Below, one piece after another: positions 24,728 through 64,000 of a stretch of DNA of 64,000 nt (positions within the stretch are counted from its first letter, which is position 1; the number at the start of each line of letters is the position of its first letter). A program made the position numbers and the translations under genes. The notes under the pieces are model-generated. The model ran no database searches. It saw only the letters and a program-made list of their open reading frames with translations, and was not told where the DNA came from. The DNA is taken from the IMG/VR virus record IMGVR_UViG_3300035661_000001, positions 248,001-312,000 of that record; one strand, written 5' to 3'.

Positions 24728-26614
24728 ATGATTGATATTAATGGAAATCTAATAGATAGTAAAGCAATGTTCGATAAGCTGAAGAAACAGCTGTTAAAAC
24801 TTGATCCAGTTTCGTTTTGCGAGAACTACTTAACCCTTGAAGGGGAGCCTTTCCGGCTTAGTGGAAACGGTTATAAACCCTTTGCAGATATCTATCGGTA
24901 CATTGGTATTAAAGCATTAGAACCGGGAGCCAAGCCAGTTATTATTGTAAAGGGTCGTCAGGTAGGAGGGACTACTATGGCTGGTGCTCTTGAAATGTAT
25001 TTCATGGGTTCTGGACTTTTTGGTAATGGAGAAAATCCGCCTATTAGAATCATTCATGCATTCCCGCAGTTAGAGCTAGCTGCTGCTTATTCAAAAACTA
25101 AATTGAATCAAATGATTTTCCAATCATTACCAGTTGAAGGCGAAGTTAAAAAGCCGGGAGCTAAAGTCAAGTCATACATGCAATCATTGTTGGATCAGAC
25201 TAGTGCGACGAACGATTCTTTACATTTCAAACAGTTCTTGGGTGGAAACCATCTTTGGATTGAATCTGTAGGGCTGGATGGAGATCGTATCATGGGTCGT
25301 ACGGCTGACGTGATATTTTTTGATGAAGTTCAGAAGACTACGAGTATGGCTATTGGAAATTCATTGAAAGTTTTAACGGCTTCTAAATATGGAGCACCTA
25401 CTAAGGGAGTTCAAGTATATTTCGGAACTCCTCGTAGGAAGGGATCTGATTATCATAAGATGTGGCAGAGCAGTACTCAGCAATATTATTATTTAGGATG
25501 TGAGAAGTGTGAGAAACATTTCCCTCTTTATACTCCTGGTAGTGATGATTGGGAGAAGATTTGGTTATACGGATACATTGTTAAATGTGTTCATTGTGGT
25601 CATGAGCAAGATAAGAGACATGCTGCTGATAGGGGTAAATGGGTTTCTACTAAACCGGAGAATGATTCAGATTGTAAAATGATTGGATTTCATATTAATC
25701 AAATTTACATGCCTAGATTTACTAAAGAAGATTTGATGAATGAAAAGCCAGGTAATCATCCTATTAATACTGAGCGTGTTTATCAAAATGAAGTTCTTGG
25801 AGAGTTCTATCAAGGAGATGCTTCGCCTATTACTGTAGAAGAGATAAGAGAGATTTGTGGAGATGTTGGTAGAAAATACAGAGGTAGAATAGAGCCTGCA
25901 CAAGACCAAATGGTTATTCTGGGGATAGATTATGGTGCTAGAGCAGACTTAGAGCAAATGGCAAATCCGGAGAAAGTTAATCTTACGGGGCAGTCTTATA
26001 GTACGGCTGTTGTGCTTTTGGCGAAGGGTCCTAATTTACTATCTATTGAATTTGCCACAAAGTTTAAAAGAAATGATTTTGAAAGTAAAAAGGGGTTGAT
26101 TGATCAAATTATGAGACAGTATAGTGTGCAGTTAGCTATTGGAGATATTGGATTCTCTCAAGATTTTTCAACTATGATGCATACTGCTTATGGTGACAGA
26201 TATTTAGTATCACGGGCACATAATAAAGTAAACAATCATGTTAAGTATTCTACTGATGCATTTCCAAAAGAAATAGTATTCGAGAGAGATTATTATATTT
26301 CTGAGATGTATGAATGGATGAAGAAGGGAAACATTAGATTTCCTTTGGGTAGTCATGAGCAATTAGGCTGGTTAATTGATCACTGTGCTAGTATGGAGAT
26401 AAAGCCATCTATTTCTAAATTTGGTGATCATAGTATTCATTATGTTAAAGGTGGTACGCCAAACGATGGTTTCATGGCGTTATTAAATGCTTATATAGCT
26501 TATAAATTTATTGTAACTAAAGGGTTTTCTACCAATAATCCTTTACTGCAACTTTCCTTTCAAGAATCTAAAAAGCCTTTAGCTCTGGCTGCAAGGATCC
26601 CGCGTCGATTTTAA
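24728..26614 (+). CDS. terL: Terminase large subunit
   Basis: VKGRQVGGTT (Walker A type), FFDEVQ (Walker B), FGTP coupling motif, CEKC/CVHC zinc ribbon, LGIDYG nuclease, C-terminal NDGFMA. Confidence 0.92.
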   Translation: MIDINGNLIDSKAMFDKLKKQLLKLDPVSFCENYLTLEGEPFRLSGNGYKPFADIYRYIGIKALEPGAKPVIIVKGRQVGGTTMAGALEMYFMGSGLFGNGENPPIRIIHAFPQLELAAAYSKTKLNQMIFQSLPVEGEVKKPGAKVKSYMQSLLDQTSATNDSLHFKQFLGGNHLWIESVGLDGDRIMGRTADVIFFDEVQKTTSMAIGNSLKVLTASKYGAPTKGVQVYFGTPRRKGSDYHKMWQSSTQQYYYLGCEKCEKHFPLYTPGSDDWEKIWLYGYIVKCVHCGHEQDKRHAADRGKWVSTKPENDSDCKMIGFHINQIYMPRFTKEDLMNEKPGNHPINTERVYQNEVLGEFYQGDASPITVEEIREICGDVGRKYRGRIEPAQDQMVILGIDYGARADLEQMANPEKVNLTGQSYSTAVVLLAKGPNLLSIEFATKFKRNDFESKKGLIDQIMRQYSVQLAIGDIGFSQDFSTMMHTAYGDRYLVSRAHNKVNNHVKYSTDAFPKEIVFERDYYISEMYEWMKKGNIRFPLGSHEQLGWLIDHCASMEIKPSISKFGDHSIHYVKGGTPNDGFMALLNAYIAYKFIVTKGFSTNNPLLQLSFQESKKPLALAARIPRRF

Positions 26615-26668: not shown

Positions 26669-28507
26669 ATGCCTATTGATAAAGTTTCTAAAAAGTGGGT
26701 TGGACCTTCCAATTCTGAACAATTTTTGCAACAACGATCTTCGGTGCCGCCAGTTAGTTCATTGATGGCGCAGGGCGTTTCTGGATTTCGCAGAGATGTT
26801 TTGGCTGAAGAGGTAGAGCAAGGATTATTTAGAGATGGATCTGCTCCAGCTAATAAGAAAAATGAGCCAACCTATAATTCTCATGTTGTATCCTCAGTTG
26901 GTAGAAATAAATTTGCTCAAGTAATTAGTGGTGGAGGTAATTTTCGTGGAGGTATTGGAGATACTGTAAAGCAGGCTCCTGAAGTTTACTCACCATTATG
27001 GCTGAGTAGTAATCTTAATCTTCCAAGAGATCGTCCTACTATAAATGCATGGTGTCGTAGTTTTTATGCTCTTAATCCATTCGTGCATAATGCTATTAAT
27101 TTACACAGTACTTATCCTATTAGTAAATTAAGTATTAAGTGTCCTAACAAAGATATAGAAAAATTCTTCAATGATATGATTGAAGAAATTGACCTGATGA
27201 ATATTTGTGTGCAGATTGCACAAGAATATTGGTTATTGGGTGAGGCTTTTGTTTACGCAGAATTAGATGAAGGTCGTGGAAAATGGGGAAGGTTAGTAAT
27301 ACAAAACCCAGATTACATGTTAGTTAAACGCACAGTAATTGCTAACGAACCAATGATAATGCTTCGTCCTGATGAAAATTTAAAAAAGATTGTATTTGGT
27401 ACTAAGCCAACAGATATTGAACAGAGAAAACAATTGAATCAGTATATGATTGATTCAATTAAACGTGGGGAAAATATTCCTTTAGATAATTTCAATGTTT
27501 CACATTTGGCAAGAAGAATTAGTCCGTACGAAATACGTGGCACTGGATTGCCAGTATGTATTTTCCGTCAGCTTATGTTGTTTGATAAGATGAGAGAATC
27601 AAAATATGCACAGGCTGATAATATGATTAATCCTTTGACTTTGGTCAAAGTTGGTGGTGAAGGCAATGATGCACTTCATCCTTCTTTTGTAGATTTAGAG
27701 GCGTGGAGAGAAGTATTTGAAGCGGCACAACATGATAAAGATTTTAAGATCTTTACACATGCAGGGGTAACTGTTGAAAGAGTTGGTTATGGACAGGGTA
27801 TTTTTGATATTTCTGGAGATATAACACAATTAATTAAAGAAATATATATTGGATTGCAAGTACCCCCTGTTTTAATGGATGGTGGAGCTGATACGACCTA
27901 TGCAAACGGTGGTGTGGCGTTAGATGTATTAAGACAGCGTTACATGCAATTCCGTAATATGTTGTCAGCGTGGTTAAAGACTAAGATTTTTGCACCAATT
28001 TCTAAAATTCAAGGATTTTATGATTATTCTGGTGGAGAGAAACAATTAATTATACCAGAAGTTGATTGGAATCACATGTCATTATTTGACGCTGGTGATT
28101 ACATTAACACACTTATTACTTTGACACAGGGACAAGACGATCAAAAAAGAGCATCTTTACATACTTTGTATAGATCAATGGGTCTTGAATTTGAAGATGA
28201 AGTATTAAAAATTCGTAAAGAAGCTATTCAAAATGCTATTGCCAAAAAAGAAAAAATGGCATTAGAAATGATGGATCTGAATTCATTACGTTCGTTAGAT
28301 GATCAAGATGAAATTCCACAACCACAGGGTATGCCTCAACCTAGTGCAGATGGTGCAGTGCCAGGTCAAATGGGTGCTCCACCTATGGGTATGCCGGGAA
28401 TGGATATGATGCCACCTGGTGGTATGAGTCCTCCTGCAACGCCTCCTCCTGGTGGAGAATCATTACCACCACCAGCGCCTGGTGGTGGACCGCCGCCCGC
28501 GTTATAA
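26669..28507 (+). CDS. Portal protein
   Basis: Immediately after terL; NPFVHNAINLH, YWLLGEAF, HLARRISPYEIRG, GLQVPPVL; Pro/Gly/Met-rich C-tail. Confidence 0.85.
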   Translation: MPIDKVSKKWVGPSNSEQFLQQRSSVPPVSSLMAQGVSGFRRDVLAEEVEQGLFRDGSAPANKKNEPTYNSHVVSSVGRNKFAQVISGGGNFRGGIGDTVKQAPEVYSPLWLSSNLNLPRDRPTINAWCRSFYALNPFVHNAINLHSTYPISKLSIKCPNKDIEKFFNDMIEEIDLMNICVQIAQEYWLLGEAFVYAELDEGRGKWGRLVIQNPDYMLVKRTVIANEPMIMLRPDENLKKIVFGTKPTDIEQRKQLNQYMIDSIKRGENIPLDNFNVSHLARRISPYEIRGTGLPVCIFRQLMLFDKMRESKYAQADNMINPLTLVKVGGEGNDALHPSFVDLEAWREVFEAAQHDKDFKIFTHAGVTVERVGYGQGIFDISGDITQLIKEIYIGLQVPPVLMDGGADTTYANGGVALDVLRQRYMQFRNMLSAWLKTKIFAPISKIQGFYDYSGGEKQLIIPEVDWNHMSLFDAGDYINTLITLTQGQDDQKRASLHTLYRSMGLEFEDEVLKIRKEAIQNAIAKKEKMALEMMDLNSLRSLDDQDEIPQPQGMPQPSADGAVPGQMGAPPMGMPGMDMMPPGGMSPPATPPPGGESLPPPAPGGGPPPAL

Positions 28508-29960: not shown

Positions 29961-30944
29961 ATGGGAACCAGGGTTAAACGCGTCAGAACAAACATTTCTG
30001 CCGAGCAGATGGCTAATGCCATAACTGTTGGTTGGAAAGAGCTATTTGGCGTTACCCCTTCTAAGCAACAAGTGGCAATGGTATTAGCTCAAAATGCATT
30101 AGAAACGGGTCACAGAAAAAGCATGTGGAATTATAATGTTGGTAACATTATCACCAACGGTAATGATTCCTATGATTATTTCGACGACTTAACAACAGAT
30201 GAGCAAATAAAACCTGGAACTTGGAAAAAGATGAATCTTAAGTACAGAGCTTATCCATCATTGGATGCTGGAGTTAAGGACTATTTAAAATTCATTAGTG
30301 GTAAAAAATACAGTGGTGCTTGGAAACATATTTTGAATCCTGATCCTGTAGCTTTTTCTAAAGCTCTTAAATCAGCCGGATATTATACTGTTAATGAAGC
30401 AGCATATACAAAGACTTTATCAAAACTATATGACCAATATTCAGGATCAACCGTGAAATCTAAAATCCCTTTATCTAACATACCACAAAATGACAATAAT
30501 TTATCTAATATAATAGATAACTATTTGCAAATGGTAGCCGCTTCAGAAAAGAGCAATAAAAAATTGTATAAACAATTTTTGCCTTATCATAAATTTTTAA
30601 TTAAGATAGAATCTCAAAATTATACAGATTCTATTGAGTTTGCTCGTATAGCTTGTACAGCGTTAGAGGAAGAATTATTAGCAAAAGCTTATACCCACAC
30701 AAACGGACAATGTGTAGAAATTGAGTGTGAAATACCTGGACCACAAAAAGAATGTATAAATTTGACCAGGGAAATTTTATCATCTGTTGAAGATGCTTTT
30801 TGTGCAGCTACTAAAAAAATCGGCGGTATAGTTATAGCCACAGATTGTATTACTAATACAATTTCATCATATCAACAAATCAGTTTTAAACAGGCTGATT
30901 TTCAACGTGAACAATTTTTGCTGAAATTTAATAAGGGACAATAA
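29961..30944 (+). CDS. GH73/glucosaminidase-like peptidoglycan hydrolase with C-terminal extension
   Basis: AQNALETG, NYNVGNI, YRAYPSLDAGVKDY, ALKSAGYYT follow the FlgJ/glucosaminidase lysozyme-fold pattern. Confidence 0.75.
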   Translation: MGTRVKRVRTNISAEQMANAITVGWKELFGVTPSKQQVAMVLAQNALETGHRKSMWNYNVGNIITNGNDSYDYFDDLTTDEQIKPGTWKKMNLKYRAYPSLDAGVKDYLKFISGKKYSGAWKHILNPDPVAFSKALKSAGYYTVNEAAYTKTLSKLYDQYSGSTVKSKIPLSNIPQNDNNLSNIIDNYLQMVAASEKSNKKLYKQFLPYHKFLIKIESQNYTDSIEFARIACTALEEELLAKAYTHTNGQCVEIECEIPGPQKECINLTREILSSVEDAFCAATKKIGGIVIATDCITNTISSYQQISFKQADFQREQFLLKFNKGQ

Positions 30945-33521: not shown

Positions 33522-33535
33522 ATTATAATGAAATA

Positions 33536-33550
33536 TCAATATTGACATAT
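33536..33550 (+). promoter_or_regulatory. Candidate late promoter TCAATA-N6-TAT
   Basis: TCAATATTGACATAT upstream of protease operon. Confidence 0.5.
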
Positions 33551-33658
33551 ACTCATGAGTATAAATAAATTCTACGTAATTTAAAAGATTCCGTATAGTA
33601 ATAATTCATTATAATAACGATATACTTACTGAGATCTCTCAAACATGGAGAGTTGTGT

Positions 33659-33820
33659 ATGAGTTTTATTAAGCATGGCGATGGAAAAATAATGACTGTT
33701 TTAGATGAAGAAGAATTAACTGATGTACAAAAAAAATCAGTCAATGACGTATCTAAAAAAAGGATCAAGCAATCTGCTGAAGAGACTGATGCTTCAATTG
33801 AGAAGAAATCAGGGAGATAA
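33659..33820 (+). CDS. Unannotated 53-aa ORF (MSFIKHGDGKIM...)
   Basis: GGAG RBS, ATG 33659, TAA 33818-20, ends 3 nt before protease ATG; N-terminus mimics that of the protease. Confidence 0.7.
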   Translation: MSFIKHGDGKIMTVLDEEELTDVQKKSVNDVSKKRIKQSAEETDASIEKKSGR

Positions 33821-33823
33821 ATA

Positions 33824-36800
33824 ATGTCATTTATAAAATTAGGTGAATTGATTGAAATCAACGGGATTGAAAATCCAGAATCCTGTATTCCTGCTGTCAG
33901 CGCTGAAGTATTAGAAAATTTTAGAAAAACTGCTGCTAGTTTGAAAAAAATAGCTCCTAAGGCAGAAGACTTTTTATATTTTTCCGCTGTCATGATGCAT
34001 GCTGCAGAAGCTGCTGGATTAAATGATGATGGAACTCCAAAACTGAATGCTCGTGGTGAGCAAGTTCAAGTTGGTTGGGACAAACGTGGTGGAACTTGGC
34101 GTTGGACTTCAAATGATCCAAGTATTAAACCATATAAAAATTCTAATGGCGATATCTTCCCCGAAGAAGAACTAGTTAAAGCTTATAAAAAATGGGTACA
34201 TAAACCTCTTTGTATTGATCATAAATCAAGTTCTGTAGATCATACAAGAGGTTTTATTGTTGATACTTATTATGATCGTAGTTTAAAACGTGTAATTGCT
34301 TTGTGCGCTTTAGATAAAGCCAATTATCCAGAACTAGCACGTAAAGTGTCGACCGGAATGCAAACTGCCGTATCAATGGGTACAGCGGTGGGCAGAGCAA
34401 TTTGTTCAGACTGTGCTACTGTTGCCCGCGCCGAAGCAGATTTTTGTGATCATATGAGACGCAAGAGTTGTTACGGTGAAATTAACGTTGATTTAAATCC
34501 AATTGAATTATCAATTGTTGTTAATGGTGCTGATCCAAGAGCAAATATTAAACACATTATTGCTTCAGCTACTACATTAAATTCTTATGTTGATACTAAA
34601 GTACAAGAATTGAAAAAAATAGCTGATTTACAATTTTCGGCAACGTTCTCTGTAACAGACCCCATGGGTAATGAAGGTAAACAATCAGCAGCTCATTTTG
34701 AAGTAGATGGTCATGATCTAGAAACTTTCAAAAAAGAGGTCGATGGTGCCTTTGCAAGATTAGCAGAAATCGCTGAGCAAGCAAAAAAAACCGAACAAGA
34801 TACTAATGATTCCGCATTTAATCAATCGTCTGGTTCAATTTCCATGGATGAAGGCACTTCACCTAACACTGATTCTGGATTAGCTCCGCCACATGCAAGA
34901 TACGCGTCTGTTGATTTAAACAAAATTTCTGTAGGCGAGTTACTTAAACTAACTGCTACAATAGAAACTAAATTAAATCACATGAAACAAAATTTAGATA
35001 AGTTAGCAAAATCAAATGTACATGAGGAAAATATGTCAATGAATAAAAAGAGTTACTACCAGGGTACTGAAGAGCCAACGCCTGGTCAAGCCAAGTATCC
35101 AAAGGACCCCGGTCATATGGCTTATGAAGACGATAAGCACATGCACGGTCAATCTCCTTTCCCTGGTGTAGGTCCCGTTGATGGTCTTCATCCAAGTCCA
35201 GATTCAGCAGAACAAAGCAATGAGTTAGAACGTAAAAAAATGTTAGCTCGTGCTGAAGCTGAAGAGAGAGCTATGAAACGCCAATCAATTGTTAATTTGG
35301 CAAAACAAGCTCTAGAAGATAAAAAAGCTTATTTCAACAATGGTGAAGGACCAAATAATCCTAATACACCAACCCCAGGTAAAACCAAATATCCAGTTGA
35401 CAAAGGTCATATGGCTTATGAAGATGATAAGCACATGCATGGTCAAAAACCATTCCCTGGTGTAGGTTCAGTAGATGGTCTTCACCCAAGCCCAGATTCA
35501 GCAGAGATTTCTGATGAATTAAAACGTAAAGAATTGTTACGTAGAGCTAATACTTTACATGGCAGATTTGTTACGGCTTCTAAATTCGATGGTACTAGAG
35601 ATATAAATAATAGTGCTTGGGAAATTCGTCTAGGTGACAGATTATTGTTAACAGCTTCTGTTAAAGATCTTTCTGGTGGTCGTTCCGAAATGATGTATGA
35701 TACCATCAATACAGCTGAATTTGGTAAAAGACTATTAGAAAAAGTAAAAGTTTTTGGTGCTGATAAAGTTAGTACATTATTTAAGAATGCTCAAGATCCA
35801 AATGCTGCTGCTCCTGTTGCAGCACCTGCTAGTGGTCCTGCTGATGCTGGTCCCCTAGGCAATTCGCCTGCAGAAGATACTGGTAAATCTGGTGATCCAA
35901 AAGAATCGGCTCTTGAAATGGCTGAAAAAGTTAGAGACATGTCTTCTGATTTAGTTGAAGCTGTCAGGGCTTTAACTGGTGAACAAGCTGAAATGGGCGC
36001 TGATATGGCTGCACCAGGAATGGCTGCTACTGCTTCTGATTTTAGTAGCGTTCATATGCATGCGCTAAGAGGCGAAATTAATGGATCATTAAATCATGCT
36101 ATGAGAGAAGTCGTAGCTGAATTAGAAGAGCATCAAGAAGAACTAGATACAATTGTTGGGTTATATGATAAGGGTGCAGTTACTGCTTCTAATGAAGAAT
36201 TAATTGAATCACTTTTAGATGACGCAACTGTTGCTGCCAAATCTGCCGTTGCAGATGGCTTTAGATTAATGACCGCTTTTGTTAAGTATGCTCGTGGCAC
36301 TAAGGCTATTATTAAACGTGCTGAAATAGAGGCAGAACTTAATGCTTTAAGTGATAACGAAGGAGATACAACAATGAGTGGTGGTGATGATAGTTTAATG
36401 GCTCTGATCGACAGCACTAATTCAGATCTGAATTCTGTTAGAGAAATGATGGATGAAAACGGTGAACCTGGTCTTGGCACAGATGGTGATGGCGAAGGGT
36501 TTGACGGACTTGAAGAACAAGTTAGCGAAAATGACGGATTAAGCGGTGATGGCTTATCAGATCTTGAATCTGACCCTCTTGCAGAAGAAGGTGATGATCT
36601 ATTAGCTGATGATGATAATGATCTTATGGCTAAAAAAGAAGAATTGAAAGATCTTGATTTAAAGCCAGGAACTACTGTTCAAGTTACTGCTGGTTTCAAT
36701 TCTAGAGCCAGCCGCGCCGCTCTTCGTGCTAAACTTGCAGCTGACGCACTTGGTTCATATGGATCTGATCCAACTGGAAAACAAGATGATGGTCAATTAC

Positions 36801-37483
36801 AAGATGCATCAAAAATTAAATTCTACGATATGTTAGATACTGCTGATAGTCAAGCAACTACTAGTAGGGTCCCAAATGTAGATAATAAATCTTCTGATAA
36901 TCTTGATGTAATTGAGACTCTTCCAGAAATTAATAAAGCTATGTTGGATCTTGCCAAAGCTCCACCTAAGGTTCGTAAAGAAGCTGAAGCTATTCATAAA
37001 TTAGTTAGTGAAGGTAAATTAGATCGTTCTGATCTTGATGCCCTAGTAGCTGAAGGTTTGGATAAGGATGCGGTTTCTTATTACAAAAAATACTACGGTC
37101 AAACAGACGGCGGTGGTGAATTTGCCAGTGAATTGGTAAAAGAACATGTTAAGGCTCAATTAGAAGAAGAGCTTAATAGATACAAAGTCAAAATGGCTAG
37201 AGCTTATGAAGTAGCATATGATATGGTTGACCGTGGATTATGCCATAACGATAAAATCGCCGTCGCTTCACAAGTTGAAGAAATTATGAAATTCAATGAC
37301 GACAGTTTCGATACTTTGAAAAGAGTAGTTGCTAAACACTCTCCAGTAATGCGTAAAGAAGCTGGTCGCATGCCACAGGTTGGTTTATTCGGTTCCGGTG
37401 AAAACACTGTAGCCTCTCCAGCCGAAGATGATTGGTCTTTATTGTCTGCAGCATTTGCTAAGACTTCTAAGAGAATGTTTTAA
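33824..37483 (+). CDS. Prohead maturation protease fused to large scaffold/core region (1219 aa)
   Basis: DIFPEEEL, CIDH (His), AVSMG (Ser), ELSIVVNGADP typical of herpes/HK97-fold prohead proteases; CSDC...FCDH insert; acidic, helical C-terminal part; between portal and capsid. Confidence 0.82.
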   Translation: MSFIKLGELIEINGIENPESCIPAVSAEVLENFRKTAASLKKIAPKAEDFLYFSAVMMHAAEAAGLNDDGTPKLNARGEQVQVGWDKRGGTWRWTSNDPSIKPYKNSNGDIFPEEELVKAYKKWVHKPLCIDHKSSSVDHTRGFIVDTYYDRSLKRVIALCALDKANYPELARKVSTGMQTAVSMGTAVGRAICSDCATVARAEADFCDHMRRKSCYGEINVDLNPIELSIVVNGADPRANIKHIIASATTLNSYVDTKVQELKKIADLQFSATFSVTDPMGNEGKQSAAHFEVDGHDLETFKKEVDGAFARLAEIAEQAKKTEQDTNDSAFNQSSGSISMDEGTSPNTDSGLAPPHARYASVDLNKISVGELLKLTATIETKLNHMKQNLDKLAKSNVHEENMSMNKKSYYQGTEEPTPGQAKYPKDPGHMAYEDDKHMHGQSPFPGVGPVDGLHPSPDSAEQSNELERKKMLARAEAEERAMKRQSIVNLAKQALEDKKAYFNNGEGPNNPNTPTPGKTKYPVDKGHMAYEDDKHMHGQKPFPGVGSVDGLHPSPDSAEISDELKRKELLRRANTLHGRFVTASKFDGTRDINNSAWEIRLGDRLLLTASVKDLSGGRSEMMYDTINTAEFGKRLLEKVKVFGADKVSTLFKNAQDPNAAAPVAAPASGPADAGPLGNSPAEDTGKSGDPKESALEMAEKVRDMSSDLVEAVRALTGEQAEMGADMAAPGMAATASDFSSVHMHALRGEINGSLNHAMREVVAELEEHQEELDTIVGLYDKGAVTASNEELIESLLDDATVAAKSAVADGFRLMTAFVKYARGTKAIIKRAEIEAELNALSDNEGDTTMSGGDDSLMALIDSTNSDLNSVREMMDENGEPGLGTDGDGEGFDGLEEQVSENDGLSGDGLSDLESDPLAEEGDDLLADDDNDLMAKKEELKDLDLKPGTTVQVTAGFNSRASRAALRAKLAADALGSYGSDPTGKQDDGQLQDASKIKFYDMLDTADSQATTSRVPNVDNKSSDNLDVIETLPEINKAMLDLAKAPPKVRKEAEAIHKLVSEGKLDRSDLDALVAEGLDKDAVSYYKKYYGQTDGGGEFASELVKEHVKAQLEEELNRYKVKMARAYEVAYDMVDRGLCHNDKIAVASQVEEIMKFNDDSFDTLKRVVAKHSPVMRKEAGRMPQVGLFGSGENTVASPAEDDWSLLSAAFAKTSKRMF
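35111..35505 (+). repeat. Intragenic direct repeat, two 101-nt copies (35111-35211, 35405-35505)
   Basis: 90/101 identical by manual alignment; encodes GHMAYEDDKHMHGQxPFPGVGxVDGLHPSPDSAE. Confidence 0.92.
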
Positions 37484-37507: not shown

Positions 37508-38176
37508 ATGAGAAATAAAAGTGTATCAGATTTTGTTGCTGCAACAATGGATGCAGTACTAAAAAGCGAAAATCATCAATCATTATTTGGTGGTGTCTAT
37601 AAATATGCCTCGGAACAATGTGATAAATGTCATCACCCTAAAGAAGAATGTAGTTGTGACTCTTCCATGGCATGGGATGAATTTAACGCTGATGACAGTA
37701 GTGCAGAGTCTGAAGAATCTGATTCTAATGAAGTTTCAGATTCTTCAGAAGAAGATAAAGAAGCGACAGCATTTGATGTAGCGATTGATAGTTTATTAAC
37801 TGCTTCTGCTGCATTAGATAGTGTTGGACTTGATAGAGGATCCTCTTTAAGCTTGAAACTTGCCTCTTTAGTTGTTGAAGCTAAAAAGAAAGAAGAAAAG
37901 AAAAAGAGTGATGTTAAAAAGAGCAAGGAATCTAAACATAGTTCCGACTCTAATGATGCTAGAGCGAAAAAGAAAAAGAAAGATGAAGAAGATAAGAAAA
38001 AGAGCGATGCTAAAAAGAAGAGTGATGCTAAAAAGAAAAGTGATTCTAATGATGCTAGGGCGAAAAAGCCAGCCTCTAGTTCTAGCTCCAGTTCCAGCTC
38101 TTCAAAAAAACCAGCTTCATCTTCTAGCTCCAGTTCAGGTTCTAAAAAACCAAATCCATTCGCTAAAAAGAAGTAA
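37508..38176 (+). CDS. Bipartite acidic / Lys-Ser-rich low-complexity core protein
   Basis: YKYA|S motif; acidic N-half; KKSDA x3, SDSNDARAKK x2, KKPASSSSSS x2. Confidence 0.7.
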   Translation: MRNKSVSDFVAATMDAVLKSENHQSLFGGVYKYASEQCDKCHHPKEECSCDSSMAWDEFNADDSSAESEESDSNEVSDSSEEDKEATAFDVAIDSLLTASAALDSVGLDRGSSLSLKLASLVVEAKKKEEKKKSDVKKSKESKHSSDSNDARAKKKKKDEEDKKKSDAKKKSDAKKKSDSNDARAKKPASSSSSSSSSSKKPASSSSSSSGSKKPNPFAKKK

Positions 38177-39710: not shown

Positions 39711-40628
39711 ATGCATTTTATATACAAAATAACAAATCAACTAGATGGAAAAAATTATATTGGTCAAACCATTAATCCAAATTATAGATGGTATCAACAT
39801 CGCTCTTATGCCGGTGTCACCAATAAACATAAACAATATATTCATTACGCCATGTCAAAACATGGTATTGAAAATTTCATTTTCGAGGTGATTGCTACAT
39901 GTTTAACGCAAGATGATGCTAATGAAACTGAAACTGCCGTAATTAAACAATATGACAGTATGAATAATAATCATGGCTACAATTTAAAATGCGGTGGAGT
40001 AAACGGTTCCTTTTCTGAAGAAACTCGCCAAAAACTAAGTAAATCATATTCAAAATATATTGCTGAACATGGGCACCCAGCTTTAGGAACTAAAAGAACT
40101 CCAGAACAAATACAAAATTTAATACAAGCCCGTAAAGACCATCCAGTTGAATATACTGATGAAATACGACAACGAATATCTGATGCTCATAGAGGTAAAC
40201 CATTATCTGAAGAGCATAGAAATAATATGGTGGAGGCTATCAAGAAGGCGAAAACAGAAAAAGCTGAAGCAAGATACATTTCTGAAGATATTAAATGCTC
40301 AGTTGATGGTTGTAAAATTAAAGGAAAAGCAAAATATCGTCTTATAGATGATATTAGATATTGTGCAAAACATGGATTAAAAATGCAACGAAATGGAAAT
40401 TTGGATCCAAAGCCTAAATCAAAATATAATAAAGATAATCCAATGCCAGAAGAACAACGTAAAAAATGTGGCGTTGGTAACATTGGAAGAGTTGCTCATA
40501 ATAGAATTGTATTTTCTGATGAACAAATAAAAACAATATTAGTTGACTCACGATCTGCCAGAAAGATAGCTAAAGCTTTTGGAGTAACTGAAAAGGTTAT
40601 TTTAAGGATCTGGGCTGGCAAATACTAA
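39711..40628 (+). mobile_element. GIY-YIG homing endonuclease (NUMOD3-like repeats, Cys/His finger, HTH)
   Basis: FIYKITNQLDGKNYIGQT, HGYN, CSVDGC...YCAKH. Confidence 0.9.
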
Positions 40629-47872: not shown

Positions 47873-48886
47873 ATGAATATGTTTAGTAATCAAGGGCAAA
47901 TGAATGCTTCTTCAATGAAAGATGTTTTACTTCAATTAGTAAAATACGCTTCAATTCTTGAAGAGAATCAACCAGCCAACATGGGTCTAGCTGGTCAGGT
48001 ATCCTTGAGCGATGATAAACGCGACGAATTGATTTCTCGTGCTATCATGACTCAAGATGGTAAAATTGCTTTAGCCCAAGCAATGGCAAATCCAATTCGT
48101 AGAAACTTAGATTACCACGGTATTTCACGTCGTGCATTAGTTGTTGATCCTCTTCCACAAGGTGCTCAACCAACTTACGATAGAGATATCGATGTATCTG
48201 CTGTAGTTATTTCTTCTAACGGTACTGGACCAGAGTCTAGAGTTTTCGGTGATAGAGTAGTAGTACCTACCTTCGAAATCTATGCTAACCCAACTGTTAG
48301 AATTTCCGAAGTTAGACGTCGTAGATTCAACGTTATTGACCGTGCCGTTCAAAAAGCTCGTCAAGAAATAATGGCTCAAGAAGATGCGAACGTTTTCGCA
48401 GCTCTTGATGCTGCTGCTTCAGTAGAAAATACTCTTACTGATATTTCTGATGCTGGTCTTTTGAAGAGAGATCTTGTTGAAATCAAGGCTCAAATTGATC
48501 GTTGGGACTTAGTGACTACTAAATACTTTATGAATATCAATGAATTTACCGATATTCTTAAATGGGGTAGCGGTGGTGGACAAGGTGTTGGTGGTGGTGA
48601 TTTCGATCCTGTCACAATGAGAGAAGTTCTACAAACCGGTCTTTACGCCCATATCTGGGGTACTGATATTATGGTAAGCAAGATCGTTCCACCAGGAACC
48701 ATCTATGGCTGTGCCGATCCTGAATTCGTTGGTGTTATGCCAATTAGACAAGACATCGAAGTTCTTCCTGCTGATGAACCAAAACAATTAAAACTTGGTT
48801 GGGTTGTAAGCGAAGAAATCGGTATCGCGATCGTCAATCCTCGTGGTGTTTCTGCTGGTCGTAAATCTGTAACCATCGGTTCCTAA
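47873..48886 (+). CDS. Major capsid protein (HK97-like fold)
   Basis: 337 aa; AMANPIRRNLDY...VVDPLPQG, RFNVIDRAVQKARQEIMAQED backbone helix, LKLGWVVSEEIGIAIVNPRGV C-terminus; strong RBS, flanked by terminators. Confidence 0.88.
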   Translation: MNMFSNQGQMNASSMKDVLLQLVKYASILEENQPANMGLAGQVSLSDDKRDELISRAIMTQDGKIALAQAMANPIRRNLDYHGISRRALVVDPLPQGAQPTYDRDIDVSAVVISSNGTGPESRVFGDRVVVPTFEIYANPTVRISEVRRRRFNVIDRAVQKARQEIMAQEDANVFAALDAAASVENTLTDISDAGLLKRDLVEIKAQIDRWDLVTTKYFMNINEFTDILKWGSGGGQGVGGGDFDPVTMREVLQTGLYAHIWGTDIMVSKIVPPGTIYGCADPEFVGVMPIRQDIEVLPADEPKQLKLGWVVSEEIGIAIVNPRGVSAGRKSVTIGS

Positions 48887-48954: not shown

Positions 48955-49043
48955 TTGTTTACTTAAATCATTACTCGGACAGTTTAATGATTTTTGAGTG
49001 TAATATTGTTGTATTATTACATAATCTACTACCGAGATAAATA

Positions 49044-49742
49044 ATGAATATTGACGAGATTTTAGATATATACACTTTAATTTCTGACGGAATCTCTGAT
49101 ATCCCCAGCAGGAAACAGGATTTTCTAGTTAGAAAAAGAGCATTTGATGCTGCTCAAAAACCAGCTATGGTTAAAAATGCTTTTGATACTCGTCGTATCG
49201 ACCAAGAAGTAGAATATAATCCTAGACGTGGATTGCAAAACTATAATAGAAGCGAACAATTTGTTTCGGAAGGTTTAGAGAAAAAAATAAGAAGTTTCTC
49301 TAAACTTAGAGACGTTTTGGTTGATTTAAAATTACAATTTGGTAAAGATCAGAACTGGCAAGACAGTAATGCCCGCGTATTATTATCAACTTTGGACAAG
49401 GGTTTGAGAATTGGAATTAATGATGGAGATTTTTCAGAAAATCAACCGTCAATGGGAAGCTTAGATTATATCGAAGAATTATTGCATGTTAGATATAGGC
49501 TAGGATTTGATGATTTGACTAAATTAGGAGCAACAGATCTGAAAAAGATTATTCTTTCTAAAGATGAAGAATTAACTCACGGAGATATGAATAAAGATTT
49601 GCACATCAGTAAAAATGATATCAGTACACAAACATATGATACTCTTCTAGAAAAATTATTCGGAGGCATCAGAGCAACGAAAGATAATCCTGAAGTAGAA
49701 AGAACGATCACTATAACTATTAAAGACAAATTTGTAGAGTAA
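49044..49742 (+). CDS. Hypothetical protein (possible head protein)
   Basis: 232 aa; MVKNA|F motif; preceded by GTAATA-N6-TAT. Confidence 0.65.
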   Translation: MNIDEILDIYTLISDGISDIPSRKQDFLVRKRAFDAAQKPAMVKNAFDTRRIDQEVEYNPRRGLQNYNRSEQFVSEGLEKKIRSFSKLRDVLVDLKLQFGKDQNWQDSNARVLLSTLDKGLRIGINDGDFSENQPSMGSLDYIEELLHVRYRLGFDDLTKLGATDLKKIILSKDEELTHGDMNKDLHISKNDISTQTYDTLLEKLFGGIRATKDNPEVERTITITIKDKFVE

Positions 49743-59587: not shown

Positions 59588-60180
59588 ATGGATACTATTG
59601 ATCATCTTGTTAAGATAGCGGATAAGTTTGAAAAAAATCAACTCAATATGTGTACCACATAAAAAGCAATGATTTTCGTGGTAAATACATTTATCCGCTA
59701 TCTGAATTATAAGATGTTTATTCGGACCTATATAAAAAAGAAATTAAAAAATATAAGGGGAGAGAAAAACATCCCGAAACAAAAATTGATATCTTAGGTG
59801 CAAGGTGGAAGGATTGCACAATTCTTTCCACTTTAAATCCTATTAAGATATTTCAAATGGAAGAACTGTTAGGTGTCCCTGGATATAAAAACAGTAAAGA
59901 TACTGAAGTTTTTAGATTTGATATTAAAGATCTAGTAGATTCAATAATGTGCTTATATGATGATAACAAGTCGCCAAGAAGCAAAGATGCTTATAAAAAG
60001 GTAACTAGTAAATCATATAAAGAAACACAATTTGTCCCTCCAGAAACAACTAAGTATTTTGCAGAATGCAGAATGCAAAATGAGTACCCATTACTTTTTG
60101 GTAATGTTACTCATTTATTAGTATTAGGAAAAATTCCCACTAGTAAAGCTAAGATATTAAAATTTAAAGCAACCTTATGA
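59588..60180 (+). pseudogene. Disrupted gene (frameshift plus nonsense codon)
   Basis: TAAGGT RBS + ATG 59588; one extra A in the A7 run 59631-37 joins it to the frame of ORF 59857-60180, which has an in-frame TAA at 59710-12. Confidence 0.75.
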
Positions 60181-60181
60181 A

Positions 60182-60871
60182 TTATAAATTTGTTATAGTT
60201 TTATTTTCTAATTCTATCAAAACATTTACCATAGCTATGGTTTGTATTTGAGAGTAAACGTCACTTTTAAGATAATTACAATGAGAACAACAAGATACTA
60301 TATTTTCTACAACATAACCTATTTTATTATTTAATCGGTCTAACCCACAGCCAGTCCCTATTTCATTTTTTCTAAAATGATCATTGCAATAAAAACAAGG
60401 TTTAATGACTTCCTGTGAAAATTGTTCAAATGTTAAATTAAATTCTCTATTTCGTTTTTTCGCAGCGCCCTTAGCAGTTCTAAATCTACCTTTTAATGTT
60501 TTATTTTGAGCCCTATGATATTCTTTTAATTTTTCTTGGTTTATTATAGAATATTGTTTATTATATTTAGATTTTTCTTTTTTATGTTCATCTTTGTATT
60601 TTTTTATTGATTCTTCTTTATTATCATAATAATAGTCAATGGACTTTTGTTTAATGTCTTCTTCATTATTTTTATAATACTCTTTTCGTTTTTCTGAATT
60701 TTCTTCTTTATTTTCTTGATACCATTTTTCTTGATACTCTTTTCGTTCATTTTTATGTGATTCTCTATATTCTTTTTGTTCTCTTTTAATTTTATCTCTA
60801 TTGGCATCTCTGTATTTTTTTGCCGCCACCCGAGCACGTATCTTTTTTTCTTCATCTGTCAATTGGGTCAT
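60182..60871 (-). mobile_element. HNH endonuclease with 15-aa helical repeats
   Basis: CFYC...GLDRLNNKIGY...NIVSCCSHCNYLK; GAGGAGG RBS. Confidence 0.85.
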
Positions 60872-60925
60872 ATCAATTACCTCCTCAACATTATATCAGA
60901 ATATACATAGATATTTTTTAGGGCG

Positions 60926-61255
60926 TCATTTTTTAACAAAAATTTGTATGATCTGGATAACTAGGCTTAGTAATCCAGTGACGAAAAGAACCTGAATTTT
61001 AAATAGATCTTTGCTTATTTCTTCAGTTTGTTTAATCAATTTATCGATTTTTGCATCAGTGTCGCCATTTTGAGATTCCACATCATCGAATCTGGAATCT
61101 AAAACATCTTGTTGTTTTTTGCCGGCATTTAATAATGAAATTATTTCTTCATTTTGCTCAACCATTTCGGCTTCTATTTCTATGGCTTTTTTGTTTACTT
61201 CTAAGAATACTTCTAAGTCTTTTTTATTTATTTGTTCATTTGTATTGCCAGCCAC
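60926..61255 (-). CDS. Coiled-coil protein with C-terminal transmembrane helix (XhlA/holin-like?)
   Basis: AAGGAG RBS + GTG; IQVLFVTGLLSLVIQIIQIFV then KK. Confidence 0.55.
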   Translation of the reverse strand: MAGNTNEQINKKDLEVFLEVNKKAIEIEAEMVEQNEEIISLLNAGKKQQDVLDSRFDDVESQNGDTDAKIDKLIKQTEEISKDLFKIQVLFVTGLLSLVIQIIQIFVKK

Positions 61256-61267
61256 AAAAGTCTCCTT

Positions 61268-61450
61268 TTAAATTTGTTTCTTTTCACCTTTTCTTTCTTT
61301 TATTTTTTCGATAGCACGTTCACACTTATCTTTTAATTCTTCATAACTATGAACCATTTCATCAACCGAATCGGTATCGCCATTTGCCCAATCTGTTGTT
61401 ATTATTTTTGAAACTATATTATTAATCTGTCCGCGGGTCGTCATAATCAT
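61268..61450 (-). CDS. Hypothetical protein
   Basis: 60 aa; ATGA-coupled to upstream minus-strand gene. Confidence 0.6.
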   Translation of the reverse strand: MIMTTRGQINNIVSKIITTDWANGDTDSVDEMVHSYEELKDKCERAIEKIKERKGEKKQI

Positions 61451-61836
61451 CCTTTTTTGATAAGCGGTTGGGCATCCATCTCTGCCAATTCAGCATTTTG
61501 ATTTGCATATTCAGCATCACTTAGATTTAGCTCTTCATAATTTTCTTCTTTAATAGATAATATTGATCTATCTCTTGAAGGAAATGTTTCGTCTCTTTTA
61601 AAGAGTAGATTTTTATTTTCTATTTCTGGAGCAACCCGCCTAACACAAATTTTGTTTCTTTTCTTGAATAAAGACCCGGATTCAAATGATTTGAATAATT
61701 GTTCTTTAGAAAAAGAGAAATGTTTCTTATTTAACAGATCGACTGAAGACATTGCTTTTATCGTTACATTTAAGTCTGCTAAGCTAACATTCATTGTGGA
61801 AACATTAGTTACCCAGAAAGACTCGCTATTTTTCAT
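61447..61836 (-). CDS. Hypothetical protein sharing a domain with 49750-50400
   Basis: FWVTNVS...DLL...S...LFKSFESGSL. Confidence 0.65.
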   Translation of the reverse strand: MKNSESFWVTNVSTMNVSLADLNVTIKAMSSVDLLNKKHFSFSKEQLFKSFESGSLFKKRNKICVRRVAPEIENKNLLFKRDETFPSRDRSILSIKEENYEELNLSDAEYANQNAELAEMDAQPLIKKG

Positions 61837-61903
61837 TTATCATAATGATAGGTTATTCATAAGTTTTTAGTTATATTAAGATATTAATTGTAGCGAGGAT
61901 TTT

Positions 61904-62239
61904 GTGCAAACACTTAACTATTTTCCGGGACAAAGAGTAACAATTTTTTTGGAAACAGTCGACGGCTATGGAGCTAGATCTGATAGTTTATCCATGCCTT
62001 TAGTTAATAGAGTAATTTTTCCTAGTCTTACTTTAGCTTCTGCTTATCCACAACCAATGACTCAATTAGATATTGGTTTATATTATTACCAATTCATTTT
62101 ACCTACAGGAGCTATTTCGATAGGAAATTATTTAGTAGATGTAGTCTTTACTAATCCTGCAAATAATACAATTACTACCACTGGTTATCAAATTGTTGTT
62201 TCCGCACCTTTTGGTAATTTTTCTACAACAATAGGATAA
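61904..62239 (+). CDS. Small Ig-like structural protein
   Basis: GAGGA RBS + GTG; GLYYYQFILP...GNYLVDV beta-sandwich pattern. Confidence 0.6.
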   Translation: MQTLNYFPGQRVTIFLETVDGYGARSDSLSMPLVNRVIFPSLTLASAYPQPMTQLDIGLYYYQFILPTGAISIGNYLVDVVFTNPANNTITTTGYQIVVSAPFGNFSTTIG

Positions 62240-62243
62240 ACCA

Positions 62244-63940: not shown

Positions 63941-64000
63941 ACAATGAATATAACATTATTGGTAGAAGTTGAAAATTAATCTTATTATATGCGATTATTT

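What the first reader, a model, noticed from the sequence alone, without database searches (positions are those of the whole stretch)
33824..37483. 1219-aa protease-scaffold polyprotein with zinc insert and many self-cleavage sites
Seen: an N-terminal protease domain (DH, VSMG, ELS) with a CxxC...CxH insert, followed by about 950 aa of repeats, helical and very acidic segments. These are punctuated by KIA|D, RYA|S, KKS|Y, KKA|Y, KNA|Q, VTA|S, KRA|E, VTA|G, KEA|E and KEA|G. Known: protease-scaffold fusions occur (herpesvirus, several phages) but are usually much shorter. Inferred: a polyprotein releasing several distinct core peptides.
Basis: partly seen in the sequence, partly recalled or inferred. 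Interest (0 to 1): 0.6.

Follow-up and report, generated by a model that had tools for sequence, protein, structure and literature searches.

The report
Megaphage head protease fused to scaffold
This 1219-residue gene of a 452-kb phage joins the capsid-maturation protease (with a zinc-binding insert) to a long scaffold-like protein that also seems to be made on its own from a conserved internal start, and a recurring Lys-x-Ala motif marks where the protease probably cuts it and its neighbours.

Summary
The ORF (33824-37483, +, 1219 aa) is real and lies between portal and major capsid genes of a complete 452-kb phage related to Bacillus phage G. Residues 1-250 are a prohead serine protease. His133 and Ser184 are invariant, the closest relative is phage G gp19, and the best fold matches are T4 gp21 and herpesvirus proteases. 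The CxxC...CxH insert is conserved, with the His replaced by Cys in some homologs. It also occurs in phage G and actinophage proteases, so it marks a protease subfamily.

The 970-aa extension holds two 77%-identical repeats, long helices, a very acidic stretch and a C-terminal helical domain. More than 340 sequence clusters keep this full-length fusion.

First, Met404 is a conserved in-frame ATG preceded by GAGGA or AAGGA in about 57 of 58 related loci, against 7% for other internal ATGs. This predicts a nested 816-aa scaffold, as in herpesvirus UL26.5 and lambda Nu3. Second, Lys-x-Ala is specifically over-represented and conserved in the extension and in other head-module proteins, including the capsid protein's N-terminal extension. 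It is the likely cleavage motif.

The three VTA sites do not fit in this protein, and three sites were missed. No cleavage has been shown experimentally.

The parts
33824..37483 (+). Whole gene: 1219-aa protease-scaffold fusion (P0001). GGGAG ribosome-binding site at 33812-33816.
   Evidence: More than 830 full-length homologs.
33824..34573 (+). Prohead (capsid maturation) serine protease domain, aa 1-250.
   Evidence: PHROG head maturation protease, 6e-13. Phage G gp19, 34% identity, 1e-22. Foldseek top hits are herpesvirus proteases and T4 gp21. VIA-align gives 5jbl Z 7.7 and 1vzv Z 7.6.
34139..34153 (+). Invariant N106-x-N108-G-D110 motif. This is the site where 19 homologs carry an intein.
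34220..34222 (+). Catalytic His133 codon.
   Evidence: Invariant. Aligns with T4 gp21 His85 in hhalign (weak).
34373..34375 (+). Catalytic Ser184 codon, in the VSMG motif.
   Evidence: Invariant. Aligns with T4 gp21 Ser140 (weak).
34403..34453 (+). Putative zinc site C194-x-x-C197 ... C208-x-H210.
   Evidence: The three Cys are invariant. H210 is replaced by Cys in 4 of 23 sequences. The motif is shared with phage G gp19, Gordonia phage Pupper gp94 and Rhodococcus phage E3 gp77.
34616..34624 (+). K265-I-A267: candidate release site just after the protease domain.
   Evidence: K in 110 of 118 and A in 104 of 118 close homologs. K-[ILMV]-[AS] is common in divergent homologs.
34898..34909 (+). 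R359-Y-A361|S362: a conserved island ([LI]xPP..[KR][YFL]AS) in an otherwise unalignable linker. Candidate release site.
35024..35035 (+). Internal ribosome-binding site GAGGA (35024-35028) and in-frame ATG of Met404 (35033-35035).
   Evidence: E401 is GAG in 23 of 24 orthologs, against a mean of 21% in 42 Glu columns. GAGGA or AAGGA precedes the conserved ATG in about 57 of 58 loci, against 6.7% of 2021 other internal ATGs. Met is present in 88 of 89 divergent homologs.
35033..37483 (+). Predicted nested product, aa 404-1219 (816 aa, 88 kDa, pI 4.7): the scaffold alone.
35045..35056 (+). K408-x-[A/G/S]410|Y411 site that opens repeat 1.
   Evidence: K in 85 of 89 and Y in 82 of 89 divergent homologs.
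35075..35260 (+). Repeat 1 core, aa 418-479: a Pro/Gly-rich half followed by a helix.
   Evidence: 77% identical to repeat 2. Fold prediction.
35321..35332 (+). K500-x-A502|Y503 site that opens repeat 2.
35369..35554 (+). Repeat 2 core, aa 516-577.
35555..35788 (+). Small alpha/beta domain, aa 578-655. It ends at K654-x-A656|Q657.
   Evidence: pLDDT about 94. K in 81 of 89 and A in 81 of 89.
35897..36454 (+). Long-helix region, aa 692-877. It holds K821-Y-A823|R and K831-R-A833|E.
   Evidence: pLDDT about 95. Sites.
36455..36703 (+). Disordered, very acidic, length-variable segment, aa 878-960.
36731..36742 (+). K970-L-A972|A site in a conserved helix.
   Evidence: K in 84 of 89 and A in 85 of 89.
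36920..37336 (+). C-terminal helical domain, aa 1033-1171. It holds K1052-E-A1054|E and K1123-M-A1125|R. Residues 1115-1169 are homologous to phage G gp21.
   Evidence: hhalign E 4e-6, probability 87%. Sites.
37355..37366 (+). K1178-x-A1180|G/S site, 39 residues from the C-terminus. Its position resembles the herpesvirus maturation site.
37364..37480 (+). C-terminal tail, aa 1181-1219: a disordered stretch followed by a terminal helix.
   Evidence: The complex test with the capsid protein gave no verdict.
47942..47953 (+). K24-Y-A26|S27 in the 41-aa N-terminal extension of the major capsid protein (gene 47873-48886). Likely substrate site.
   Evidence: K-Y-A is retained in all 29 related loci examined, 24 distinct N-termini.

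Best explanation
The gene encodes the head-maturation protease of a phage-G-like megaphage, fused in frame to the phage's scaffold or core protein.

Shown by comparison:
- Residues 1-250 are a His133/Ser184 serine protease of the herpesvirus-assemblin / T4 gp21 kind.
- This domain carries a four-ligand Cys/His (presumably zinc) insert that marks a subfamily shared with phage G gp19 and large actinophage proteases.
- The fusion is conserved in hundreds of sequence clusters.
- A conserved internal ribosome-binding site and ATG lie at Met404.
- A Lys-x-Ala motif is specifically conserved in the extension and in other head-module proteins.

Inferred mechanism:
- Ribosomes make two products. One is the full 132-kDa fusion. 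The other, from Met404, is an 88-kDa protein lacking the protease.
- Both co-assemble through their common C-terminal part into the core of the procapsid, which brings the protease inside.
- The protease then cuts after Lys-x-Ala. It frees itself at about residues 267 and 361.
- It cuts the scaffold into pieces of 40-170 residues so that the pieces can leave or remain as small internal peptides.
- It trims N-terminal propeptides of the capsid protein and of several other head proteins.
For: Protease:
- PHROG head maturation protease 6e-13.
- Phage G gp19, 1e-22, lying between portal and capsid genes. A paper calls it a head maturation protease (PMC12484599).
- His133 and Ser184 are invariant and align with T4 gp21 His85 and Ser140.
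- Fold matches to T4 gp21 and herpesvirus proteases.
- The gene lies between TerL/portal and the MCP.

Zinc site.

Fusion conserved: more than 830 full-length homologs. 344 clusters at 50% identity match the extension, and the full-length ones listed are fusions.

Nested start.

K-x-A motif:
- 10 conserved pairs at +2 against 0-4 at other spacings.
- 23 against 5-11 in 17 other head-module families, with none in excess in TerL.
- Observed/expected is 1.47 in head-module proteins of this genome, against 1.01 in the other 569 ORFs.
- [KR]YA occurs 9 times in the module, against about 1.9 expected.
- Conserved sites lie near the N-termini of the MCP and of ORFs 41810, 37508 and 40697.

Scaffold-like build: long confident helices, disordered linkers and an acidic tract. 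The C-domain is homologous to phage G gp21, a separate gene beside the protease there.
Against: - No proteomic or biochemical data exist for this phage or any close relative, so neither cleavage nor the nested product has been observed.
- The fold model of the protease is only moderate (pLDDT 62). Its structural matches are weak in absolute terms (Foldseek E 0.03, Z 7.7, with MCE barrels at similar Z).
- Pfam Peptidase_S77 does not match.
- The extension has no detectable similarity to any characterised scaffold. hhalign to T4 gp22 and gp68 is negative, and Foldseek gives only generic helical bundles.
- Several K-x-A sites lie inside predicted helices, where access is doubtful.
- K-x-A also occurs in the folded part of the capsid protein (K64-I-A66), so the motif alone cannot be sufficient.
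- The complex test of the C-terminal part with the capsid protein gave no verdict.
Confidence: 0.6

Rival explanations
1. The extension is not a scaffold. It is a precursor of internal head or ejection proteins, as with T4 internal proteins or phiKZ/SPN3US inner-body proteins. In this reading the protease carries them into the procapsid and cuts them into stable pieces. Those pieces stay with the DNA and are injected.
For: The conserved folded modules (aa 578-655 and 1033-1171) and the repeat cassettes are bounded by K-x-A sites. A piece of net charge -29 would be released between sites 833 and 972. SPN3US-type giant phages process many packaged proteins (PMC10052503).
Against: The nested-start layout, with a protease-free copy sharing the C-terminal part, is the hallmark of scaffold systems. 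No other scaffold candidate was recognised in the module. Many sites lie inside the modules and would destroy them.
Confidence: 0.2
2. The Lys-x-Ala pattern is a structural or binding feature of helical head proteins, not a cleavage motif. In this reading the protease has another specificity, for example after Glu as in T4 gp21 and SPN3US gp245.
For: In close homologs alone the +2 spacing was not distinguishable from helical spacings. Five of the sites lie in predicted helices. Relatives of known specificity cut after Glu (PMC10052503).
Against: With divergent homologs only the +2 spacing stands out, 10 against 0-4. The same holds in 17 other head-module families but not in TerL, and in raw counts of this genome's head module only. 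Several sites are islands in disordered or unalignable linkers and near N-termini.
Confidence: 0.2
3. Only the full-length protein is made. In this reading the conserved GAGGA...ATG is kept for another reason, such as a translational pause between domains or an amino-acid requirement for Glu-Glu-x-Met.
For: No expression data exist, and no RNA run holds the gene. Internal Shine-Dalgarno-like sequences can pause ribosomes (general knowledge).
Against: The purine motif is kept while the encoded residues change (EE, KE, ED, KKE). GAG at codon 401 is a unique outlier among 42 Glu columns. The Met is kept in 88 of 89 divergent homologs inside a length-variable region, and is mostly followed by Ser, Thr or Ala.
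Confidence: 0.12

Closest known systems
Herpesvirus UL26 / UL26.5 (assemblin-scaffold with a nested scaffold gene)
   Same: An N-terminal Ser/His protease of the same fold class is fused to the scaffold. A protease-free scaffold comes from an in-frame internal start. P1 of the presumed sites is Ala. Candidate release sites follow the protease domain, and one candidate site lies near the C-terminus. (Herpesvirus facts are from general knowledge. Fold matches are.)
   Different: There is no sequence similarity. This protein is about twice as long. The motif has Lys at P3 rather than a hydrophobic residue, and P1' is variable. This protein has a Cys/His insert in the protease, many more internal sites and tandem repeats. 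The nested product here would come from an internal ribosome-binding site rather than a separate transcript.
Bacillus phage G gp19 (protease) with gp21
   Same: gp19 is the closest characterised relative of the protease domain: 34% identity, the same CxxC...CxH motif and the same genome position. The capsid proteins are 54% identical. gp21 shares a 55-residue segment with the C-terminal domain.
   Different: In phage G the protease is a 300-aa stand-alone protein and gp21 is a separate gene. The phage G capsid protein lacks the N-terminal extension that carries KYA.
Long 'capsid maturation protease' proteins of large actinophages (Gordonia phage Pupper gp94, 1082 aa; Rhodococcus phage E3 gp77, 895 aa; phrog_2774)
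   Same: They have a homologous N-terminal protease domain with the same Cys/His motif and a very long C-terminal extension. They lie just upstream of the capsid gene.
   Different: Their extensions show no detectable similarity to this one. Nothing is known about a nested start or a cleavage motif in them.
T4 gp21 / gp22 and SPN3US gp245
   Same: The same protease fold class is involved, and the aligned catalytic His and Ser agree. T4 gene 21 also has an annotated internal translation start. In these phages the protease digests the core and trims many head proteins (PMC10052503).
   Different: Protease and scaffold are separate genes in these phages. Cleavage is after Glu (A-x-E in SPN3US). 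Pfam Peptidase_S77 does not match this protein. There is no similarity to gp22 or gp68.
Lambda C/Nu3 and Mu I/Z nested protease-scaffold genes
   Same: The scaffold is the C-terminal part of the protease reading frame and is also made alone from an internal start (general knowledge).
   Different: The protease families differ, the proteins are far shorter, and no sequence relation was found. The language-model search only hinted at a Mu-like protease cluster and a T4 scaffold cluster, both below its reliability mark.

Membership tests
Assemblin / T4 gp21-like prohead serine proteases | Conserved catalytic His and Ser in the family's order and motifs | tested here: met
   H133 and S184 are invariant in 23 family members and in phage G and actinophage homologs. 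hhalign pairs them with T4 His85 and Ser140, although the alignment is weak (E 0.05).
Assemblin / T4 gp21-like prohead serine proteases | Assemblin-type fold | tested here: inconclusive
   The model has pLDDT 62. Foldseek's top hits are herpesvirus proteases and T4 gp21, but at E 0.03-0.2. VIA-align ranks 5jbl (Z 7.7, 134 aa) and 1vzv (Z 7.6) first, but MCE barrels follow closely.
Assemblin / T4 gp21-like prohead serine proteases | Match to the curated profile (Pfam PF03420 Peptidase_S77) | tested here: not met
   There is no Pfam hit for P0001 or for 23 homologs. T4 gp21 itself scores 6e-112. The PHROG 'head maturation protease' profile does match (6e-13).
Assemblin / T4 gp21-like prohead serine proteases | Gene placed in the head module between portal and major capsid genes | tested here: met
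   TerL is at 24728, portal at 26669 and MCP at 47873. Phage G has the same order.
Assemblin / T4 gp21-like prohead serine proteases | Proteolytic activity on head proteins | not testable with these tools
   This needs expression and mass spectrometry.
Nested protease-scaffold genes (herpesvirus UL26/UL26.5, lambda C/Nu3, Mu I/Z) | In-frame internal start that yields the scaffold without the protease | tested here: met
   A conserved ATG (Met404) has GAGGA or AAGGA 4-9 nt upstream in about 57 of 58 loci, against 6.7% background. There is a codon-level outlier at E401. This is sequence evidence only, and the product has not been seen.
Nested protease-scaffold genes (herpesvirus UL26/UL26.5, lambda C/Nu3, Mu I/Z) | The C-terminal part acts as scaffold and binds the capsid protein | tested here: inconclusive
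   The build is helical, acidic and disordered. The complex test gave no verdict. No similarity to known scaffolds was found.
Nested protease-scaffold genes (herpesvirus UL26/UL26.5, lambda C/Nu3, Mu I/Z) | Self-cleavage sites after the protease domain and near the C-terminus | tested here: inconclusive
   Conserved K/R-x-A sites lie at 265-267, 359-361 and 1178-1180. The motif is statistically supported, but cleavage has not been observed.
Zinc-ribbon-like Cys4 / Cys3His sites | Four conserved metal ligands in a CxxC ... CxH/C arrangement | tested here: met
   C194, C197 and C208 are invariant. Position 210 is His or Cys. The arrangement is shared with distant homologs. Individual homologs give weak zinc-ribbon Pfam hits, best E 0.018. 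Metal binding is not testable here.
T4 gp22-type scaffolding proteins (PF25623 T4_CASP) | Sequence or profile similarity to gp22 or gp68 | tested here: not met
   hhalign E is 0.5 for both. There is only a sub-threshold language-model lead (0.86).
Phage G gp21-like proteins | Profile similarity to phage G gp21 | tested here: met
   hhalign probability 87%, E 4e-6. Residues 1115-1169 align with gp21 residues 279-333. Foldseek also lists gp21 weakly (E 0.027).

The most novel reading that the evidence does not exclude
The 816-aa nested protein may be the long-sought scaffold of the largest known phage capsids, the phage-G class. In this reading it is built as a string of cassettes separated by Lys-x-Ala sites, and its length and repeat number help set capsid size. 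After digestion the super-acidic piece (aa 834-972) would remain inside as an internal peptide. The zinc insert would act as a switch that keeps the fused protease inactive until assembly.
Probability: 0.15. Interest if true: 0.75.

Novelty: new variant of a known kind. Interest (0 to 1): 0.55.

Why it matters
How phages with 450-500 kb genomes build and empty their very large procapsids is unknown. For phage G, the only cultivated one, no scaffold has been named.

This gene family gives a concrete candidate with three directly testable predictions:
- an internal start at Met404;
- a Lys-x-Ala cleavage rule that also predicts propeptides of the capsid protein and of at least six other head proteins;
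- a zinc site in the protease.

It also shows that the herpesvirus-style arrangement, a protease fused to the scaffold plus a nested protease-free scaffold, recurs in a very large tailed phage together with a P1-Ala specificity.

For annotation, several hundred 'hypothetical proteins' in metagenomes can now be named.

Tried and rejected
- Pfam gave nothing significant for the whole protein or for 23 N-domains.
- Sequence searches of the PDB gave nothing, with a single sequence or with a profile.
- A DNA tandem-repeat search found none. The repeats are visible only at protein level.
- The word search with the N-domain alone found only fragments of the same family and no stand-alone close relatives.
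- A family-profile search of phage G and actinophage ORFs matched only the protease domain.
- The first K-x-A test on close homologs (57-74% identity) was not significant, 10 against 6-12 at other spacings. It was superseded by the divergent set.
- hhalign of the extension against T4 gp22, T4 gp68 and phage G gp20 was negative.
- Foldseek of the 816-aa model against PDB and BFVD returned only generic helical proteins.
- The language-model atlas gave only sub-threshold leads.
- Complex prediction of the capsid protein with aa 1126-1219 gave no verdict, so it is not evidence either way.
- The promoter and terminator scan of the gene was no better than shuffles.
- No tRNA genes were found in the window.
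- No RNA sequencing run holds the gene.
- Three of four look-ups of divergent homologs returned no DNA. A collection scan replaced them.
- The repeat motif was sought elsewhere in the genome and found only in this gene.
- Literature searches found no description of this fusion, of a zinc site in capsid proteases, or of a K-x-A rule.


Full report
**Observation.**
The window is bases 248001-312000 of a complete 451,956-bp virus record with direct terminal repeats and about 33% G+C. The frame 33824-37483 (+) is open for 1219 codons. It starts 8 nt after a GGGAG, and orthologs begin at the same Met.

Its neighbours place it in the head module:
- the large terminase at 24728-26614 and the portal at 26669-28507;
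- the major capsid protein at 47873-48886.

The capsid protein is 54% identical to the capsid protein gp27 of Bacillus phage G, so this is a phage-G-like megaphage. DNA of the gene is found in microbial-mat, sediment, freshwater and groundwater metagenomes.

**The N-terminal domain is a prohead protease.**
- Residues 106-214 match the PHROG family 'head maturation protease' (6e-13). They also match a 1263-position PHROG of unknown function (3e-16).
- The best match among deposited phages is phage G gp19 (residues 35-252, 34% identity, 1e-22). gp19 lies between portal and capsid genes and is called the head maturation protease in a recent phage G paper (PMC12484599).
- Pfam and sequence searches of the PDB find nothing.
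- In an alignment of 23 family members, H133, S184, C194, C197 and C208 are invariant. H133, S184, E228 and S230 stay invariant when phage G gp19 and two actinophage proteases are added.
- A profile comparison with T4 gp21 is weak (E 0.05). It does pair H133 with T4 residue 85 (His) and S184 with residue 140 (Ser). From my own knowledge of the literature (Cheng et al. 2004; Fokine and Rossmann 2016), these are the catalytic residues of gp21.
- An AlphaFold model of residues 1-290 is only moderate (pLDDT 62). Even so, Foldseek's top matches are almost all herpesvirus proteases and T4 gp21 (E 0.03-0.2).
- The exhaustive aligner ranks T4 gp21 (Z 7.7, 134 residues, rmsd 3.5) and varicella-zoster protease (Z 7.6) first. 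Unrelated MCE barrels follow close behind.

I take the protease assignment as well supported by sequence and context. The fold is consistent with it but not proven.

**The Cys/His insert.**
C194-x-x-C197 and C208-x-H210 follow the catalytic Ser. Position 210 is Cys instead of His in four sequences, which is the usual exchange between zinc ligands. The same motif is present in phage G gp19, Gordonia phage Pupper gp94 and Rhodococcus phage E3 gp77. It therefore marks a protease subfamily rather than this protein alone. I found no paper that describes it. Metal binding is inferred.

**Length is not unique in this lineage.**
Pupper gp94 (1082 aa, 'capsid maturation protease') and E3 gp77 (895 aa, 'prohead protease') have the homologous domain at their N-terminus and sit just before the capsid gene. 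Their extensions are not detectably related to this one.

**The extension.**
- Residues 418-479 and 516-577 are 77% identical. The motif occurs nowhere else in the genome.
- Residues 751-950 carry a net charge near -39.
- A model of residues 404-1219, built on 86 sequences, shows the following parts in order:
  - disordered Pro/Gly-rich halves of the repeats, each followed by a helix;
  - a confident small alpha/beta domain (578-655);
  - an Ala/Pro linker;
  - long confident helices (692-877);
  - a disordered acidic tract (878-960);
  - a helical C-terminal domain (1033-1171);
  - a disordered tail ending in a short helix.
- Structure searches with this model gave only generic helical proteins.
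- The word search found more than 830 full-length homologs on contigs of up to about 500 kb.
- The exhaustive search with residues 251-1219 found 344 clusters. The full-length ones listed are nearly all 1100-1300 aa, or about 1500 aa with an insert. In these the match starts at about residue 250-350 or later, so they are fusions. The shorter hits look like fragments.
- A profile of the extension matches phage G gp21 over 55 residues (1115-1169 against 279-333, E 4e-6). In phage G the protease and this module are therefore separate neighbouring genes.

**A nested gene.**
- Met404 is conserved in 88 of 89 divergent homologs, inside a region of variable length. In the window it is preceded by GAGGAAAAT, which resembles the sites upstream of other genes of this phage.
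- In 24 orthologous loci the Glu401 codon is GAG in 23. The gene set as a whole uses GAA to GAG at 79:21, and the next highest of 42 conserved Glu columns has GAG in 13 of 24.
- In 58 non-redundant loci from a wider scan, combining the two ways of picking the Met gives GAGGA or AAGGA 4-9 nt before the conserved ATG in about 57. One pick gave 50 of 59 and the other 51 of 58, and their misses were mostly a neighbouring Met chosen by mistake. The rate for the 2021 other internal in-frame ATGs of the same genes is 6.7%.
- The purine motif is kept even where the encoded residues differ (EE, KE, ED, KKE).
- The residue after the Met is mostly Ser, as at real N-termini.

This is sequence-level evidence for internal initiation giving an 816-aa, 88-kDa, pI 4.7 product. 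The arrangement is known from herpesvirus UL26/UL26.5, lambda C/Nu3 and Mu I/Z (general knowledge). T4 gene 21 also has an annotated internal start. No expression data are available.

**The cleavage motif.**
- With 88 cluster representatives of 35-57% identity the picture changes. There are 27 conserved Lys and 28 conserved Ala in residues 251-1219. They give 10 pairs at +2, against 0-4 at every other spacing from -7 to +7 (expectation 0.8).
- The sites lie at residues 408, 500, 584 (Lys in most homologs, Thr here), 654, 821, 831, 970, 1052, 1123 and 1178.
- Two further sites lie in the linker after the protease. These are K265-x-A267 and the island [LI]-x-P-P...[KR]-[YFL]-A-S at 359-362, which survives in an otherwise unalignable region.
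- The motif is supported independently in 17 other head-module protein families built from related loci. There, conserved Lys...Ala pairs number 23 at +2, against 5-11 at other spacings. The terminase shows no excess.
- In this genome alone K-x-A is 1.47 times expectation in the 19 portal-to-capsid proteins, with other spacings at 0.83-1.04. It is 1.01 times expectation in the other 569 ORFs.
- [KR]-Y-A occurs 9 times in that module, against about 1.9 expected from the genome-wide rate.
- Conserved K-x-A sites with variable P2 lie near the N-termini of ORF 41810 (residues 10-12), ORF 37508 (32-34) and ORF 40697 (67-69). Others lie in ORF 45643, ORF 28588 and the portal.
- The capsid protein has a 41-residue N-terminal extension that phage G lacks. 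K-Y-A in this extension is retained in all 29 related loci examined, followed by Ser or Ala.

I therefore regard Lys-x-Ala (P3 Lys, P1 Ala or Gly) as the probable recognition motif. This differs from the cut after Glu in SPN3US gp245 (PMC10052503) and T4, and recalls the P1 Ala of herpesvirus proteases. The caveats are these:
- Five sites lie in predicted helices.
- K64-I-A66 lies in the folded capsid protein, so accessibility must matter.
- No cleavage has been observed.

If all sites were used, the pieces would be 10-230 residues long. They would include a 25-kDa protease core and a 139-residue piece of net charge -29.

- The protease, the insert, the nature of the extension and most K-x-A sites hold.
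- The three VTA sites do not fit, and three sites were missed.
- The comparison 'usually much shorter' overlooks homologous long fusions.
- The nested start was not seen.
- Whether the fragments are 'distinct core peptides' or simply scaffold debris is open.

**Rivals.**
- The extension could be a precursor of packaged internal proteins rather than a scaffold.
- K-x-A could be structural.
- The GAGGA-ATG could serve something other than initiation.

Each has a simple experimental test, given in the report sections.

**Novelty.**
The kind (protease fused to scaffold, with a nested scaffold gene) is known. Its occurrence in phage-G-like megaphages appears undescribed in the literature I could search. 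The same holds for its size and cassette build, the Cys/His insert, and the inferred Lys-x-Ala rule across the head module. I rate it a new variant of a known kind.

**Limits.**
Only two structure predictions were allowed, so single domains of the extension were not folded separately. The protease model is of moderate quality. The complex prediction gave no verdict.

Noticed in passing
L028:9989-14779; also proteins P0054, P0110, P0183 and 15 others: Nineteen homologs of about 1400-1600 aa carry an intein inside the protease domain. It sits at two adjacent sites of the invariant K-N-x-N-G-D motif, after N106 or after N108. Each shows the canonical Cys start and an HN|C (once HN|S) end. The window's own gene has no intein.
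   Followed up: partly
window 26669-28507 (portal), around aa 309-310: Several portal homologs in related loci carry one or two large inteins inserted between ...LRE and SKYAQ. The window's portal is intein-free.
   Followed up: no
window 39711-40628: A GIY-YIG homing endonuclease gene sits inside the head module (PHROG 5e-36).
   Followed up: no
window 47873-48886: The major capsid protein is 54% identical to phage G gp27 and 85-99% identical across more than 2000 metagenomic proteins, so it is far more conserved than the protease-scaffold (57-74%). It has a 41-aa N-terminal extension that is absent from phage G.
   Followed up: partly
window 37508-38176: In the 222-aa ORF just downstream, a conserved K-[YF]-A-S (aa 32-35) is followed by a Cys/His-rich insert whose length differs greatly among orthologs.
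   Followed up: no
window 29961-30944: An endolysin-like protein is encoded in the head module. Phage G has muramidase-like gp22/23 beside its protease, and gp22 is detected in its virion proteome (PMC12484599).
   Followed up: no
window 33522-33823 and 33553-33993 (-): A 302-nt gap lies upstream of the gene, which is unusual among the tightly packed neighbours. A 146-aa antisense ORF overlaps the gap and the gene start, and it is probably spurious. The promoter scan was no better than chance.
   Followed up: partly
window 33814-33826 and 49034-49046: The identical sequence GAGATAAATAATG surrounds the start codons of this gene and of the ORF at 49044.
   Followed up: no
window about 60000-64000: Gene orientation switches to the minus strand, and GC skew and AT skew change sign near 60 kb.
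   Followed up: no
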